A DNA stretch of 64,000 bases from Magallana gigas (taxonomy: Eukaryota). The stretch lies in assembly GCF_963853765.1 (NCBI RefSeq), contig NC_088853.1, forward strand, positions 26,474,001-26,538,000, in the 5' to 3' direction. Position numbers and translations under genes: made by a program. The notes below the pieces were generated by a model. The model was not told the origin of the DNA and did no database searches. It saw only the letters and a program-made list of their open reading frames with translations. Position 1 is the first letter of the stretch, and each line of letters opens with the position of its first letter. Shown piece after piece: positions 21,293-42,897 of this stretch.

Positions 21293-22318
21293 TTAAGGAG
21301 ACACAATCCACATAAACTGTTCAGGAAGCGTTGGAGGTTCTTCATCCTTAAGACTTCCACGAGTCCTTATTGAAAGCAGTCTTTTACTCCTGACTGGACA
21401 AGTCTCCAGGAACCTTTTGTCCAGACTGTCTTTAACACTCCGGAAGCTTTCACTTTCCCAGGAAAAAGGGTGGGACATAAAGCCACCATCCCCTTCCTCG
21501 TCGCTACTCATGTACTTATGCGCTGACTTGCTGGAAAGTAATCCACGCACAAGCTCCTTCTTGTCCTTTGACCATTTTGTTTTCTTGTCCAAGGCAGACA
21601 GCCGACGTCTAAGTTTCTGCAATGATGAACAAAGATAATGAATTTTAAAATAGTTTAAAAAAGAAAGAACAAAAAGCTTGATATGCCTCTCAAATCAGCT
21701 TCTCGTACCACACAATCATAATAAAGGTAGAATCCCAATAATTAGAATTAAAATTATTTACAAATATCTGAACTGTTGAAATATGACATGTTAAAACCAT
21801 TCTTAAATCTAATATTACCTCCTTTTTTCTCTCATAGGTTGCCTGCCTCTTTTTGTGAATTTCTGCCTTGTTTTTTGACACTCTGTTTTCTGCCTCCTTC
21901 TTTGAGGTGAACTATCTTTTGATGGCACCTGCAAAAAAATCAATCAATAAGAAATGTTCTCAATATAAAAAATTAAGTAGTTTTGAATCAATCGTGTTAT
22001 CAGGCCAGAGTAAGCTGGTTCACCTTCTCAGTTGACAGAGAAATAAATCATATTAAATAACTGTATCACGAAATGCATATACATGCACATAACCTCATTC
22101 ATATTTACAGTTGCAAATTCGTCTATGGTTTTAATTTTATATCAACTGCCTGTTAACATAACAGTTGTGTTCACAGATCATAGACATTTTACTTATAAAA
22201 ATTTATAAATGATATTTAAAATTTACCATGTATTACTTCCTCTGAGGTATCTGGGGCAATTCCTTGCACACTTGTTTTAATGTAATTGGTAAGTTCAAAG
22301 TTGTCTTCATCTGTATAC
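21293..22318 (-). pseudogene. 3-exon gene fragment with a C14orf93-like (TE-accessory) C-terminal motif; one nonsense codon
   Basis: Exons 22227-22318, 21819-21928 and 21293-21616 have canonical AG/GT sites and compatible phases. The product is YTDEDNFELTNYIK...GAIKR*FTSKKE...KLRRR...YMSSDEEGDGGFMSHPFSWESESFRSVKDSLD...RTRGSLKDEEPP. Confidence 0.75.
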
Positions 22319-23204
22319 CTGTGAACAAATATCAAAATATTTAGGAAACTTATTTTTAGATTTTCATTTAATTTCATTTGGATTCTGGCAAGAGTTAATC
22401 TAGTAATACCTCTTTTTCAAATTCTATGTCATGTCTCTCTCAAGGCAATTGAAATTGTCAATGGTTATGATTTGAGCGATTTATCTTTGTAATAAGGCTC
22501 GAAATGAAAATATGTCACTTCCGGTCGAAACCGGAAGTGAAACAACTTTTTCGAAAAAATGAATTTTCTGATCAAATCAGAAATGAATATGTGTTTGGTA
22601 GAGCTTATTAAGCTGAATCTAACACTGAAAGCCGTTTTAAAATCGGACGATGCATTACAGAGATATCGGGGTTTAAAAATTTTCCGGAAATTTTGATTCC
22701 GCGTCTTTGGTTTAAAAAATTTTAAAAATTTTTATGAAGGTAAGTTATGATAAATAAAATAATAAACAATTATATATTTTTATGTATTATTATAGATTTA
22801 CTTATTGTGTTACAAGTTTAGCGTATATGTCATGAAGCATCAGCTTTAAGATTAGAAGACAGTAAGTTGTTTGTTCATTCTTTTGATGGAACAATGTCCG
22901 TGTATAAAGTGATATTTGGTAACCCATGACTGAAAGGAAAGGGGTAGCCATTTTGTTAGAGACAAACATTTTATGATGGAGAGACGAGAAGTATTTGTTA
23001 TAGGATTGTATGTTGTTATAAGCTTAGCATTAAGAGTTCTTGGGGTTTTTTTCAATAGCAATTCAAAATTTAGTCAGTTTTGTGTACATTTAATTTTGGG
23101 AGTTTCTTTTGTAATTGATCTGATATTCTTCATAATTGCTCTGGTGTATTTCTCCATCTGGCCAAAAATAATTTAAGGTATGTAAAACCTCATAAGATTG
23201 TCAA

Positions 23205-23739
23205 TTCTTATGTACTTCCATCTCGAATAAAACATAACATAACACCCCATTTTTCTACAATATTTATTATTTTGTGCATATTGACGTCCGATACAGTAGT
23301 CGCTCATTAAACAAATTCCTTCAATTTCAAAACCATAACACACATTTTCACCAATCCAAACCACACCATTCGCAAAACTTCACGACGTTTTGCTACTTGA
23401 CAAGCACCTTGTCAGTAACACTAGAAACTGTGCATCATATATGCATCTTTGCAACATCTAACATGTTCAAAATCTTTGAATTCTTAAATATAATCGACTT
23501 TCTCGTGCCGTCCGGAATCGTCAGAATGAATACTACTCGAACATACTCTATCCGTAATCACCTTTGAACCCCGCCTACCTCATGAATATTCATCATTACC
23601 ACAAAAGAAAATATTTTCAATCTAAATCACTACGTTCAAACGAAAGAAAATATATTTCTTATATACTTCAATCTCGAATAAAACATAACATAACACCCCA
23701 TTTTTCTACAATATTTATTATTTTGTGCATATTGACGTC
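23205..23739 (-). repeat. 84-bp direct repeat pair just downstream of the YR ORF (split direct repeats, B1-A2-B2-like)
   Basis: 23205-23288 and 23656-23739 are near-identical (ttctta.....tctcgaataaaacata...ttgtgcatattgacgtc). Confidence 0.85.
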
Positions 23740-39525: not shown

Positions 39526-41699
39526 CCAGTAACCATGACTTAAAAGAAAAGGTTTCTATGCGTCTAATATATTTATATTTCAGTTAATATATTTCATTTT
39601 ACATATGATTTGTGTATTTAAGTGGTTTTTTTTTATTTTTTCTCTGCAATGCCTCTACTATCACATTGCACACATGGGTTCTCTTCGGGTACTTCGACTT
39701 CTTCCCTTATTAAAGATCCAGTCGCCGCAACATCCTAGCAAACGAGAGATATTAATACAAGTTTTAGAACTTGTTTATAGTACGCTGTAAAGTTTAATCA
39801 AATTCTGAAGGGTCACCAAAGAAAAAAAATATTGTAGATCAGATTTATTCTCTAAGATTATTCCTAAAAGTAATTAATTTTTCATGCATCTGCAAACAAC
39901 GGATGATTAAATGATAGTGACTCCCACAAATTAAGTAGTGATTTATCATATGTTTACATGTATACCCCGTTTCAGAGGTGACGAGGATAAACTATCAGTT
40001 AAAAAAACTGTTGAGAAAAATACGTTGATATCGCACCTGACGAGAATAACATGCGAACCAAGTTACTATCATCATGTAAAATGTATTTTTTACATGTTGC
40101 GAACATTTTCTATAGTTTTAGCTTGTTGGTAAATTAACGTTATTTACTCTTCTTAATTATCGTGGAATTCTATCTGACTGTGATGTGATAGAATGTAAAT
40201 TAATGTTTATCAAACGTCTTAACTGTAGTAAAGAAATAGGACATCAAAGTAATCAAGTGTAGCTTTAGGAAATATACTTATTAGAAAAGCAGGATTGAAG
40301 GACAATGTTTCAGCTAACAAATGTGTGTTTGACACTAATATAGTTAATGCAATTACATAACAATTAGCGGATTGAAGCAGGTGAATAAAGGGGCGTTTAC
40401 CTGGGAGATGGTCAGTTTAGGGATAAAGAAATATACTCTGATTGGATGATTTATACATGTCAATTATTTAGATGGTCACGCCAGTAAAATATTATGATAT
40501 GTTTTATAGATTATTCTAAGATGAAGAGAGTAAGAGTTCGATAGTTAGAGGTTAAGAGTCAAGATACAAGTCGTCTGGATAATCCGTTACGTTTTACCTC
40601 ACTGTCATATTTAGGTTAACATTAAGTTAGAATTATTAATTACCAAGTTTCCCCTTTTTAATGGGTACGGAGTGGAGAGTAACTATTTGTATATATGTGT
40701 TATTAACTGGAATGAATGTGGAAATACAGCGAGTGTTGAGCTAATTCCCTAGTTATCGTCCGGTACGGAAAATATCCCATACGGTACAAATCCGGCGGTT
40801 ATAGTACCAGAAGTATAAATTAATTACGTATATTGCGTCATTGATTATATAGTGTAAACACATATTGTATTCTCCCAACGTATGCTTATTTTTATGTATG
40901 ACCTCTAACCCTGGTCTACCCTGATGTCACATGGTATATTCCAACATCCACGACCACCCGCTGGAGCTCCAGGTCCGTTTCCACCGTTGACCCTTCCACA
41001 CCTACCTGTGTTTTTCCTTATCTTGTATTCTTTGTCTCTTGTCTGCCACATATATTGTCAGGTAAGACACCAGATATTTGTAGTCTATGTTTGATAGTTT
41101 CTCGGCTACACAACAATTACGTGTAACAAAAGATGACGAAATTGTGGAACATCGACCAAAATATGAAAAAGGAATGGCTAGTGTGCAGTACTTTTAGTTA
41201 GTTCACAAAACGTGATAATTTATGAAGTGTTAATTGGGTGTTCATGAATGTGATTTTAGAATACCAAATGATAAAGAATTAAAAAAACAGCTGTGAATTT
41301 AAGAGAGAAAATCTTGTGCGATAAATTAAAAAGATGAAGATGTAAGATGAGAGATAATTATTTATAAGAGATATCGATAATATACACGTAAATATAATAA
41401 ACAGGCATCTGTTTGCAGGTTTCTTTTTTTCAAAATCGGACTTGCACTGGTCTATTTATTTTCGTGTTCCTCAAAGTTTATAGATATTTTCTTAGATATG
41501 CACATGATGTTTAAAGGTATTTTCTCATCGTCGCTAGCCAAGGGTGACAATCCAAGGTGTTTCTCTATTCACCGTTGGCAGATTTAGTAGCTTTAACCGC
41601 GCCGTTTATCGGTTTGTAAAGAGTTACGTGCCTTAGCTTTATTGGCTTTATTAATTTTTATCCAATGATAATCCGTCTTACTCTCATACTCGATAGACA

Positions 41700-42897
41700 T
41701 GGTGGCCTCTACAAAACGTGTTAAAAGAGAAGCTGAAATTTGTAGCCGTTTCAATCGTTGCATCGTTAGACACTGTAACAGAGACGCAGAATAGAAGTAT
41801 ACTATCGCTTCAACAAGGACACGACGTGTTTCTGAGTACGAGAACTGGTAGTAAAACTCAGTTTGAAGGAAACCCACAATTGAAGGGGTTATATGGAGAA
41901 CACTGAATAAGAACGTGGGCCATATGACTGTGTATGGAAGTCCGGATATGCTCCTGACCAGTAATAAGTGGCGCGATATGTAGAAATCAACGACGTACCA
42001 GGAAAAACTAAACCCGATCGCAGTGGACGAGGCGCATACAGTTTTACAATGGTACATTTATTAATTTTTTTATTAATACTTCAATTACAATCTATTAAAA
42101 TCGTTATGGATTAACGTGTTGGATGTCTACATCTGAGTATAATACATTGGTAAAACTTAACAACTGACCATATTTCAGGAGGAAATACCTCATAGAACAT
42201 ATAATTGACCGACTCAGTTTTCTAGTTCTACAAGTGTGTGATGTTTTAAAATGACACGATCTTTTTGTATATACTTTTCGGTACTATCGGTGCACTTCAG
42301 TTAAAATGATTACAATATAACATAATTCATTTTATGAACACACCATTAATATATTAATAACCATACTTTCTAGGAAGTGATTTTCTTTTCCCCTAAAGTA
42401 ATTATTAGATCCCTAAGAGTTTGCTGTATGACTTTCTTCGTGAACATGATAAATGTTGTATACTCAGAGGCTATACTGCAGTAATAACATTGCGACTGAT
42501 TCCTTTATTAAACAAATCAGTATGTATGTACATCACTTGTTAATGTAATACATATTGTTGATTTTAAGTCCAGGGTGAAGGTTCTGATCAAGAAGAACCA
42601 GTTAGGAAATGGTTTTCACAGATTGGACAATTTAGGTCTTTATGTCTTGAAGTATCACTTGTTACTCTTACAGCAACTTCAGGGGCCTCATTTAGAAGAG
42701 AGTTTATTAAGATGTGTTTTCCTGCAGGATGTGAAGTTATCACAGAGAGCCCTGACCGACAAAACATCAAGATATCATCTCTTCAAATACCAAAAAATGA
42801 CAACATTGAAGCAATATTGATGTGGTTGCTTGATGACTTACAACCAATAAAAGAAAAGCTTCCAAGACACATATTTTGTAAAACAACATCCAGTTTC
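41700..42897 (+). pseudogene. RecQ-family SF2 helicase, two exons, deleted and truncated (AcademH-like)
   Basis: QGHDVFLSTRTGSK (motif I), YGSPDML, IAVDEAHTVLQW (motif II) with a phase-2 intron at 42052-42573, then RKWFSQIGQFRS..VTLTATSG (motif III), SPDRQNI and KLPRHIFC. Confidence 0.88.

What the first reader, a model, noticed from the sequence alone, without database searches (positions are those of the whole stretch)
21293..42897. Candidate 'chromatin-cargo' transposon system: SET, BEN, PHD x2, C14orf93-like and YR-associated genes within ~21 kb
Seen in sequence: spliced gene relics for a PR-Set7-like SET domain (minus, 28409-29953), a BEN domain (plus, 34004-35094), two PHD fingers (39082-39525), a C14orf93-like motif (21293-22318) and a RecQ helicase. 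A domain I associate with SET/tyrosine-recombinase TE proteins (37156-37845) is also present. The BEN and C14orf93-like genes each carry only one visible lesion. Established: BEN, PHD and Myb-like accessory domains occur in several DNA transposon superfamilies. Inference: some of these genes may belong to one large mobile element that carries its own histone-methylation writer and readers. The alternative is independent insertions.
Basis: partly seen in the sequence, partly recalled or inferred. Interest (0 to 1): 0.72.

Follow-up and report, generated by a model that had tools for sequence, protein, structure and literature searches.

The report
Mosaic of unrelated transposon relics
This 21-kb stretch of Pacific oyster chromosome is a patchwork of broken pieces from at least seven unrelated repeat and gene families, not one giant transposon, but its SET fragment does come from a real, apparently undescribed kind of recombinase transposon that carries a histone-methyltransferase domain.

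Summary
Most of the listed modules are present, but all as decayed fragments. Each module maps to a different family with its own copy number, boundaries and age, and no fetched locus elsewhere holds two of them.

- **C14orf93-like unit:** 3 copies.
- **Recombinase at 23.2-24.6 kb:** the tail of a DIRS-like retrotransposon.
- **BEN-like gene:** single copy (LOC109618867).
- **"YR-associated domain":** a truncated 5' piece of a roughly 16-kb Crypton-like element, at least 5 copies.
- **PHD pair:** a 261-bp tandem duplication of a dead exon from a Ulp1-protease/PHD family.
- **RecQ piece:** from a family with at least 69 matches in this genome.

One part of the idea survives. The SET relic is a deleted copy of a locus at C1:64.52-64.555 Mb, where four SET exons lie upstream of an intact tyrosine-recombinase gene on the same strand. 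Relatives of that recombinase carry an N-terminal SETD8-like SET domain in fish, a sea urchin and another oyster. In an ark clam the SET exons lie upstream of the recombinase gene and are joined to it in the gene model. So a transposon-borne histone-methylation writer is plausible, but the window holds only its wreck. The nearby recombinase fragment belongs to a different element. BEN, PHD, RecQ and C14orf93-like are bystanders.

The parts
18908..22446 (-). Repeated unit with 3 copies in the genome. Relative to the other copies it is interrupted by extra DNA at 19294-20169 and 20385-21290; the first of these includes a LINE zf-RVT piece at 19961-20176.
   Evidence: 94-97% identical copies at C1:3.356 Mb and C1:29.505 Mb. 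Family relatives. zf-RVT E 1.2e-7. No DUF4616.
23205..24639 (-). 3' fragment (tyrosine-recombinase part) of a DIRS-like retrotransposon.
   Evidence: 90-92% identical copies on C5 and C4. The C5 copy continues into RVT_1 (E 5e-9), RNase H and a Dam-like domain. Weak Phage_integrase match in the window.
25546..33835 (-). Deleted copy of the SET-recombinase locus at C1:64.520-64.555 Mb (94-98% identical). Junctions at 28536-28544, 27335-27337 and 25780-25787 mark missing stretches of 0.8, 5.2 and 8.7 kb. The last of these holds the recombinase gene in the paralog.
   Evidence: Collinear blastn map. A third partial copy at C1:55.557-55.565 Mb keeps sequence that the window lacks.
28408..29953 (-). 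SET gene relic: exon 1 (about 29849-29953, from the ATG) and the 3' part of exon 2 (28408-28542). The GRG motif, exons 3-4 (NH and YDYG motifs) and the stop codon are gone.
   Evidence: SUV39H2/EZH SET hits at E 0.04.
25787..26466 (.). One unit-and-a-bit of a ~560-690-bp satellite. It is expanded to ~10.6 kb between the SET exons and the recombinase gene in the paralog.
31145..31207 (.). (TA)31 microsatellite. This is the 'long hairpin' of a sister note and is not a transposon end.
33978..35091 (+). BEN-like small gene or pseudogene (LOC109618867). Single copy at DNA level, with ~6 paralogs at 40-52% protein identity.
   Evidence: The BEN assignment is weak (E 0.076), and the locus is not hit by a PF10523 genome scan.
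35992..37841 (+). 5' fragment of a ~16-kb Crypton-like element: 6.3 units of a 196-bp tandem repeat plus the first part of its recombinase ORF (37116-37841). It has a 466-bp internal deletion at 37391 and is truncated at 37841.
   Evidence: Copies on C7, C3 and C5 (two), 82-96% identical. An intact 530-codon frame in those copies is 26% identical (E 6e-33) to the L005 recombinase. TRF.
39016..39492 (+). Two decayed copies (39016-39231, 39354-39492) of the terminal PHD-finger exon of a Ulp1 (C48) protease/PHD gene family, made by a 261-bp tandem duplication.
41525..42916 (+). Fragment of a RecQ-like SF2 helicase gene: the end of the DEAH exon (with a stop) and the first ~100 codons of the next exon. 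The Helicase_C part is missing.
   Evidence: 79-85% identical DNA copies on C4 and C1. At least 69 protein-level matches genome-wide. DEAD and Helicase_C in intact paralogs. RecQ/WRN/BLM top PDB hits. Mapping.
40064..40806 (.). High-copy ~740-bp interspersed repeat separating the PHD and RecQ relics.
   Evidence: More than 30 copies at ~90% identity.

Best explanation
Window 21.3-42.9 kb (Magallana gigas chromosome contig C1, about 26.50-26.52 Mb) is a transposon graveyard. It holds independent, decayed fragments of at least seven unrelated families lying side by side. Shown: each module has its own copy number, boundaries and divergence, and none co-occurs with another elsewhere. The SET piece is the 5' stump of a SET gene within a duplicated segment whose better-preserved copy at C1:64.52-64.555 Mb has four SET exons, a satellite array and then an intact tyrosine-recombinase gene, all on one strand. 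The window copy lost the SET catalytic exons and the whole recombinase through three deletions. Inferred: that locus is, or contains, a Crypton-like DNA transposon of a SET-recombinase type. In it the recombinase would cut and rejoin DNA through the R-K-R-H-Y pocket of the Cre/Xer fold, and an N-terminal SETD8-like domain could methylate a histone lysine at or near the element. Nothing in the window can still do either. The recombinase fragment at 37.1-37.8 kb is the truncated head of a different, SET-less, roughly 16-kb Crypton-like element.
For: Copy map. No co-occurrence in 42 loci (329 kb). DIRS identity of the 23.2-24.6 kb recombinase. Window-versus-paralog collinearity and deletions, with conserved coding residues (GRG, NH, YDYG) lying in the stretches the window lacks. 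A third copy supports the paralog structure as ancestral. Paralog SET exons cover Pfam SET positions 1-43, 48-92 and 88-105 in order. They align at 45-58% identity to the SET domains of fusion proteins. Recombinase relatives number over 300, some with N-terminal SET at 47-79 bits. The ark clam has the same SET-then-recombinase order on one strand. Recombinase fold: AF2 pLDDT 76.5; XerH Z 10.6 over 270 residues; top hits are Xer, Cre and topoisomerase IB. R433/R435 are invariant; K483, R552, H578 and H583 are conserved in 90% or more of sequences. The 37-kb fragment is truncated and internally deleted relative to its ~16-kb relatives, which have no SET in the 13 kb upstream.
Against: Only one of the three copies of the SET segment holds the recombinase gene, and that gene is single copy at DNA level, so its adjacency to SET in this genome rests on one locus. 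The three copies differ in extent and no termini or target-site duplications were found, which looks more like segmental duplication than transposition. The cross-species fusions are gene predictions, and only 5 of the 120 listed relatives have a precomputed SET hit (a sixth shows one when scanned). No RNA evidence could be obtained.
Confidence: 0.85

Rival explanations
1. One reading: SET, BEN, PHD, C14orf93-like and the recombinase-associated gene are cargo of one large mobile element spanning about 21 kb.
For: Physical proximity. Chromatin-related flavour of several modules. SET and recombinase are linked in other elements.
Against: Different copy numbers (1, 3, 3, 4, at least 5, at least 69). 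Identities range from about 65-67% protein identity for the PHD paralogs to 98% DNA identity for the SET segment, and boundaries differ. No second locus holds two modules. The SET segment's other copies end at 33835, just before BEN. SET and the 37-kb recombinase lie on opposite strands and belong to different subfamilies. Unrelated repeats and a DIRS fragment lie between the modules.
Confidence: 0.03
2. The SET segment is an ordinary host-gene segmental duplication, a small KMT5A-like host gene copied three times on chromosome 1. The recombinase gene beside it in the 64.5-Mb copy is an unrelated later insertion.
For: Copies have unequal extents and no recognisable ends. The recombinase is present in one copy only and is single copy as DNA. 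The SET family is small in this genome.
Against: The same SET-upstream-of-recombinase order occurs in an ark clam. It also occurs as single predicted proteins in fish, a sea urchin and Crassostrea virginica, which chance adjacency does not explain. The oyster SET exons are 45-58% identical to those fusion SET domains. The window retains sequence on both sides of the missing recombinase stretch, so the recombinase lies inside the duplicated unit.
Confidence: 0.12
3. The plus-strand modules from 34 to 43 kb (BEN-like, repeat cassettes, recombinase head, PHD, RecQ) are exons of one chimeric host transcript.
For: All lie on the plus strand. A gene model (LOC109618867) exists for the BEN part. A sister note reads the 196-bp repeats as exon-intron cassettes.
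Against: The PHD copies carry a stop and have lost zinc ligands, the RecQ piece has a stop and lacks its C-terminal half, and the recombinase head is internally deleted and truncated. The annotated protein stops after the BEN-like exons. High-copy repeats separate the pieces.
Confidence: 0.03

Closest known systems
Crypton DNA transposons (tyrosine-recombinase elements without reverse transcriptase; Kojima and Jurka 2011, PMC3212892)
   Same: The L005 and C7-type genes encode a two-domain Cre/Xer-like recombinase with the R...K...R...H...Y residues. No reverse transcriptase is nearby, and the copies are multi-kb with introns.
   Different: No DUF3504/CryptonA signature in Pfam. Two zinc fingers precede the recombinase. 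A conserved C-terminal extra exon is present, and in part of the family an N-terminal SETD8-like SET domain. That paper has no mention of a methyltransferase and uses 'set' only as an ordinary word. Ends were not defined here.
DIRS-like tyrosine-recombinase retrotransposons
   Same: The fragment at 23205-24639 has copies that continue into RT, RNase H and a Dam-like methyltransferase domain, the classic DIRS gene set.
   Different: Only the recombinase tail is present in the window. It is unrelated to the SET-linked recombinase.
KMT5A / SETD8 / PR-Set7 histone H4K20 methyltransferases
   Same: A short SET domain with GRGV, NH and YDYG-x-LPW motifs. One fish fusion protein is named SETD8-A by its source.
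   Different: Here the SET is encoded upstream of, or fused to, a transposon recombinase. Substrate and activity are untested, and the window copy lacks the catalytic half.
DNA transposons that carry an epigenetic enzyme (TET/JBP-encoding transposons of fungi, PMC12730594; DNMT-bearing retrotransposons, from my own knowledge)
   Same: A mobile element that encodes a chromatin or DNA-modifying enzyme beside its transposase.
   Different: A different enzyme (histone lysine methyltransferase), a different transposase class and a different host range (animals).

Membership tests
Tyrosine recombinase (Cre/Xer/integrase fold) | Two-domain fold (core-binding plus catalytic) like Cre/Xer | tested here: met
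   AF2 model of L005:2941-4842 has pLDDT 76.5. Foldseek top hits are XerH, XerA and Cre with probability ~1 and E 2e-3. VIA Z is 10.6 to XerH, 270 residues at 4.5 A, covering model residues 238-609.
Tyrosine recombinase (Cre/Xer/integrase fold) | Conserved catalytic residues R, K, R, H and the tyrosine nucleophile | tested here: met
   In a 25-sequence alignment R433/R435 are invariant, and K483, R552, H578 and H583 are conserved in 90% or more of sequences. The consensus GHDIRVHRxFYRLP holds the tyrosine. Pfam Phage_integrase scores 24.7-26.7 bits in three relatives, just under the 27.1 cut-off. Assignment of each residue to its catalytic role is my inference.
Crypton (DNA transposon) | Recombinase as the only enzyme of transposition, with no RT or RNase H in the element | tested here: met
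   No other long ORF and no RT-like frame in the 10 kb around the L005 gene or in the ~16-kb C7-type copies. This is a weak test by ORF listing only.
Crypton (DNA transposon) | Multiple copies with defined ends and evidence of mobility | tested here: inconclusive
   The C7-type has at least 4 long copies sharing a right end and an approximate left end. The SET-linked recombinase gene is single copy as DNA, and the three copies of its segment have unequal extents and no recognisable termini.
CryptonA / DUF3504 | Match to Pfam DUF3504 | tested here: not met
   No DUF3504 hit for either recombinase ORF, nor among the precomputed domains of 120 relatives.
SET domain (PF00856) | Match to the SET profile over its full length | tested here: inconclusive
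   The window exon has no Pfam hit and PDB SET hits at E 0.04. The three paralog exons hit positions 1-43, 48-92 and 88-105 in order at E 0.017-0.05 each, all below the cut-off. Fusion relatives score 47-79 bits and align to the exons at 42-58% identity. The joined exons were not searched.
BEN domain (PF10523) | Match to the BEN profile | tested here: inconclusive
   No hit for the single exons or for XP_019923168.1. A spliced relative gives E 0.076 on positions 5-45. A PF10523 scan of the genome finds 9 places, none here. Motif reading by eye fits BEN.
PHD finger (PF00628) | C4HC3 zinc-ligand pattern and profile match | tested here: not met
   The window copy scores 19.4 bits, below the 24 cut-off. 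Copy 1 has a stop and copy 2 has His-to-Arg and Cys-to-Ser changes. Paralog L027 passes at 24.9 bits and lies downstream of Peptidase_C48. The ancestry is PHD, but the present sequences are no longer PHD fingers.
C14orf93 / DUF4616 (PF15394) | Match to the DUF4616 profile | tested here: not met
   No hit for the window piece, its spliced relatives, or ten 313-499-aa relatives. PF15394 finds nothing in the whole genome. The only support is an Atlas cluster where 12% of members carry DUF4616.
RecQ helicases | DEAD/DEAH and Helicase_C core, closest to RecQ/WRN/BLM | tested here: met
   This holds for intact paralogs: DEAD E 6e-19 and Helicase_C E 7e-19, and RecQ, WRN, BLM and RECQ1 as top PDB hits at E 6.5e-18. 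The window piece alone gives no hit and lacks Helicase_C. RQC and zinc-binding domains were not seen.
DIRS-like retrotransposon | RT, RNase H, methyltransferase-like domain and recombinase in one element | tested here: met
   Copy L008 has RVT_1 (E 5e-9), RT_RNaseH (E 1e-4), a weak Dam match (E 0.015), and a recombinase part collinear with window 23251-24639.

The most novel reading that the evidence does not exclude
A cross-phylum clade of Crypton-like tyrosine-recombinase transposons (bivalves, teleosts, sea urchin) carries a KMT5A/SETD8-like SET domain. The SET is either an N-terminal domain of the recombinase or a set of exons just upstream of it. The transposase could therefore write a histone mark (for example on H4K20) at its own donor or target site. 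I found no description of this architecture in the searchable literature. The window holds a dead copy, and C1:64.52-64.555 Mb holds a candidate intact one.
Probability: 0.4. Interest if true: 0.65.

Novelty: new variant of a known kind. Interest (0 to 1): 0.35.

Why it matters
As proposed, the finding would have been a giant animal transposon carrying its own chromatin writer and readers. That is not what is here, and the region is typical oyster repeat debris. The useful residue is narrower. It is evidence from several phyla that one lineage of tyrosine-recombinase DNA transposons is physically coupled to a SETD8-like histone methyltransferase. Transposons that bring their own epigenetic enzyme are known for TET/JBP (fungal DNA transposons) and DNA methyltransferases (retrotransposons). 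A histone lysine methyltransferase joined to a transposase would add a new case. It would also give a testable handle on how such elements mark, hide or target chromatin. The candidate for such work is the locus at C1:64.52-64.555 Mb or the single-protein fusions of fish and sea urchin, not this window.

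Tried and rejected
- **Pfam and PDB on single exons**: mostly blank or weak, so I moved to intact paralogs.
- **The 'hairpin' near SET:** it seemed to be shared with the C14orf93-like copies and looked like a common transposon end. It is a plain (TA)31 microsatellite that matches every other TA run.
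- **Apparent collinearity of the C14orf93-like unit with 28187-28358:** 78% identity versus 94% for the unit itself. I judged it a separate short repeat, not proof of one interrupted element.
- **Search for the missing SET exons in the window:** absent.
- **Search for SET upstream of the C7-type recombinase:** none in 13 kb.
- **ESM Atlas:** blank for BEN, one weak lead for C14orf93.
- **DUF4616 and BEN family scans of the whole genome:** neither hits the window.
- **The big protein search on the C14orf93-like protein:** found a ~380-aa family, but none of the ten longest relatives that I scanned has a named domain.
- **Boundary inspection of the SET duplicon:** no inverted repeats or target duplications. 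One edge sits at a CA microsatellite.
- **P0100's contig** is not on record.
- **Literature:** five searches found no paper on SET-recombinase transposons.

Full report
**Setting.** The window is G000:C1:26474001-26538000 of a 564-Mb assembly in 29 contigs. A contig length of 57,946,171 bases equals that recorded for a Magallana gigas protein, and the closest annotated proteins are from M. gigas and C. angulata. The genome is therefore the Pacific oyster. GC content is about 33% and open frames are short, as expected for intron-rich, repeat-rich animal DNA.

**Method limits.**
- Exons were searched one at a time by reference.
- No stretch was taken for human.

**Copy map.** A DNA search of the genome with 21000-40999, plus blastn against fetched loci, splits the region into independent blocks.

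| Window coordinates | Content | Copies elsewhere |
|---|---|---|
| 18908-22446 | C14orf93-like unit | two further copies at 94-97% (C1:3.356 and 29.505 Mb) |
| 23205-24639 | recombinase relic | copies on C5 and C4 at 90-92% |
| 25546-33835 | SET segment | collinear at 94-98% with C1:64.520-64.555 Mb |
| 33836-35991 | BEN region | single copy, except a 175-bp exon-like piece at 81-82% in four places |
| 35992-37841 | tandem repeats plus recombinase head | at least four long copies at 82-96% |
| 37842-40063 | PHD region | unique, except a 200-bp high-copy repeat |
| 40064-40806 | ~740-bp repeat | more than 30 copies |
| 41525-42916 | RecQ-like piece | DNA copies at 79-85%; at least 69 protein-level matches |

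Translated searches with all module pieces against the 42 loci fetched (329 kb) found no locus outside the window with more than one module type.

**The recombinases.**
- The relic at 23205-24639 (minus strand) belongs to a DIRS-like retrotransposon. Its C5 copy runs on into RVT_1, RNase H and a Dam-like domain.
- The "YR-associated domain" at 37116-37841 (plus strand) is the head of a 530-codon frame that is intact in copies on C7, C3 and C5.
- Those copies share about 16 kb: a tandem array with a period near 200 bp (196 bp in the window, where it runs to 6.3 units) that spans about 4.7 kb, then a recombinase gene spread over about 7 kb.
- The window has only the last 6.3 repeat units and about 240 codons. 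It carries a 466-bp internal deletion at 37391 and ends at 37841.
- The 530-aa product is 26% identical (E 6e-33) to a 643-codon frame at L005:2914-4842.
- That protein has over 300 relatives in bivalves, gastropods, echinoderms and fish.
- Its conserved features are two zinc fingers, invariant R433/R435, and K483, R552, H578 and H583 conserved in 90% or more of sequences.
- Its AlphaFold model (pLDDT 76.5) matches XerH, XerA, Cre, XerD and type IB topoisomerases. The best match is XerH at Z 10.6 over 270 residues.
- Pfam Phage_integrase falls just under the cut-off in three relatives.
- It is a tyrosine recombinase with no reverse transcriptase nearby, so it works like a Crypton. It lacks the DUF3504 signature of CryptonA.

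**The SET relic.**
- On the minus strand an ATG at 29953 opens exon 1, about 35 codons ending in GKG. The stretch 28408-28542 encodes the next part of a SET domain.
- The paralog (locus L003, plus strand) has four exons. Their translations hit Pfam SET positions 1-43, 48-92 and 88-105 in order. They include the GRGV, NH and YDYG motifs.
- Relative to it, the window lacks three stretches:

| Missing stretch | Size | What it removes |
|---|---|---|
| L003 1789-2602 | 0.8 kb | the GRG codons and the acceptor of exon 2 |
| L003 3813-8993 | 5.2 kb | exons 3 and 4 |
| L005 944-9650 | 8.7 kb | see next paragraph |

- Conserved coding residues lie in the missing DNA. A third partial copy at C1:55.557-55.565 Mb (96-99% identical to the paralog over the matched parts) keeps sequence from two of these three stretches. 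These are therefore deletions in the window, not insertions in the paralog.
- The window's SET cannot be catalytic.

**What the paralog shows.** In C1:64.52-64.555 Mb the order on one strand is:
- SET exons 1-4;
- a 10.6-kb satellite array, of which the window keeps one unit at 25787-26466;
- the intact recombinase exon;
- a conserved C-terminal exon 1.2 kb further on.

The window keeps sequence from both sides of the missing recombinase stretch (25546-25780 on the far side), so the recombinase lies inside the duplicated unit.

Among relatives of this recombinase, several predicted proteins begin with a full SET domain:
- Pimephales (79 bits);
- Oryzias (74 bits, named SETD8-A by its source);
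- Strongylocentrotus (47 bits);
- Tegillarca (26 bits);
- Crassostrea virginica (a partial SET hit at 18.5 bits, E 0.0028, below the cut-off).

In the Tegillarca contig the SET exons lie 8.4 kb upstream of the recombinase exon on the same strand. The oyster SET exons are 45-58% identical to these SET domains. I read this as a real, recurrent coupling of a SETD8-like SET domain to this recombinase lineage.

Caveats:
- The oyster recombinase gene is single copy as DNA.
- The three copies of the segment differ in extent.
- No ends or target duplications were seen.
- The fusions are gene predictions.

**The other modules.**
- **BEN-like.** The exons at 33978-34828 match the annotated 127-aa XP_019923168.1 at 95%, and further exons follow to 35091. 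BEN is supported only by motif reading and an E 0.076 hit on a spliced relative. A genome scan with the BEN profile misses the locus. The family has about six paralogs at 40-52% identity.
- **PHD pair.** It is a 261-bp tandem duplication of a 216-bp relic of the last exon of a Ulp1-protease/PHD gene family. One copy has a stop and both have lost zinc ligands.
- **RecQ piece.** It retains a DEAH box (with a stop) and about 100 further codons, and lacks Helicase_C. Intact paralogs are RecQ-like.
- **C14orf93-like relic.** It is three exons of the C-terminal part of a ~380-aa family. Neither it nor its relatives match DUF4616, and that profile finds nothing in the genome.

**The 'hairpin'.** The long hairpin about 1.2 kb upstream of the SET start codon, noted in a sister finding, is (TA)31. 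Its apparent sharing with other loci is microsatellite matching.

**Verdict.**
- The interpretation as one 21-kb chromatin-cargo transposon is refuted.
- The narrower notion of a recombinase transposon with its own histone-methylation writer gains support from outside the window.
- I found no paper describing such elements in five literature searches. The Crypton survey of 2011 has no mention of a methyltransferase and uses 'set' only as an ordinary word. Fungal TET/JBP-encoding transposons are the nearest published analogue (PMC12730594, listed).

Noticed in passing
window 31145-31207: (TA)31 microsatellite. It matches other TA runs at 6734-7043 and 60227-60280 on both strands, and so mimics a shared hairpin end.
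   Followed up: yes
window 35992-37204; C7:40108786-40113533 (L011): The 196-bp tandem unit in front of the Crypton-like recombinase ORF repeats the ORF's first ~30 codons. It has 6.3 units here, while the array spans about 4.7 kb in the long copies. Its role (promoter array, recombination sites, or exon cassettes as a sister note suggests) is open.
   Followed up: partly
window 25787-26466; C1:64535263-64546018; C1:55557662-55561000: A ~560-690-bp satellite sits between the SET exons and the recombinase gene. It is expanded to ~10.6 kb in one copy and ~4 kb in another.
   Followed up: partly
L001 (C1:64505001-64508523): A Helitron-like element lies just outside the SET duplicon. It has Helitron_like_N (E 8e-27) next to a 582-aa ORF with a Herpes_teg_N-type cysteine-protease domain (E 7e-11).
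   Followed up: no
L005:6037-6261 and relatives: The SET-linked recombinases share a conserved C-terminal ~70-aa domain (HHWT...EK...W..IK pattern) encoded in a separate exon. It may be a Myb/SANT-like DNA-binding tail.
   Followed up: no
window 9307-10149 (minus): A 281-aa open frame with a Retrotrans_gag match (E 1.7e-4), probably an LTR-retrotransposon gag relic.
   Followed up: no
window 37956-38155: A 200-bp unit at 87-93% identity in many places. These include regular arrays with ~2.4-kb spacing on C4:18.03-18.05 Mb, C3:40.74 Mb and C8:45.30 Mb, so it is part of a longer tandem repeat elsewhere.
   Followed up: no
window 38291-38539 (plus): An 83-aa frame with an F-Y-T-G-F-P motif that reminds me of the HTH region of Harbinger/P-type transposases. 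No Pfam hit.
   Followed up: partly
L023 (C10:7.67 Mb) and L024 (C7:23.37 Mb): Two near-identical copies, in opposite orientation on different chromosomes, of another multi-exon SETD8-like SET gene. It is 47-55% identical to the window's exons, and no recombinase lies within 10 kb.
   Followed up: partly
L032:2864-3322 (C1:75.83 Mb): A DUF6589 plus C2H2 zinc-finger frame lies beside one RecQ-like copy, which hints that some RecQ-like copies travel with another element.
   Followed up: no
L003:5276-5858: A 583-bp repeat with more than 35 copies at 94-95% identity. It was inserted into the SET gene's intron in the 64.5-Mb copy after the third copy split off, so it is a young, probably active, short element.
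   Followed up: no
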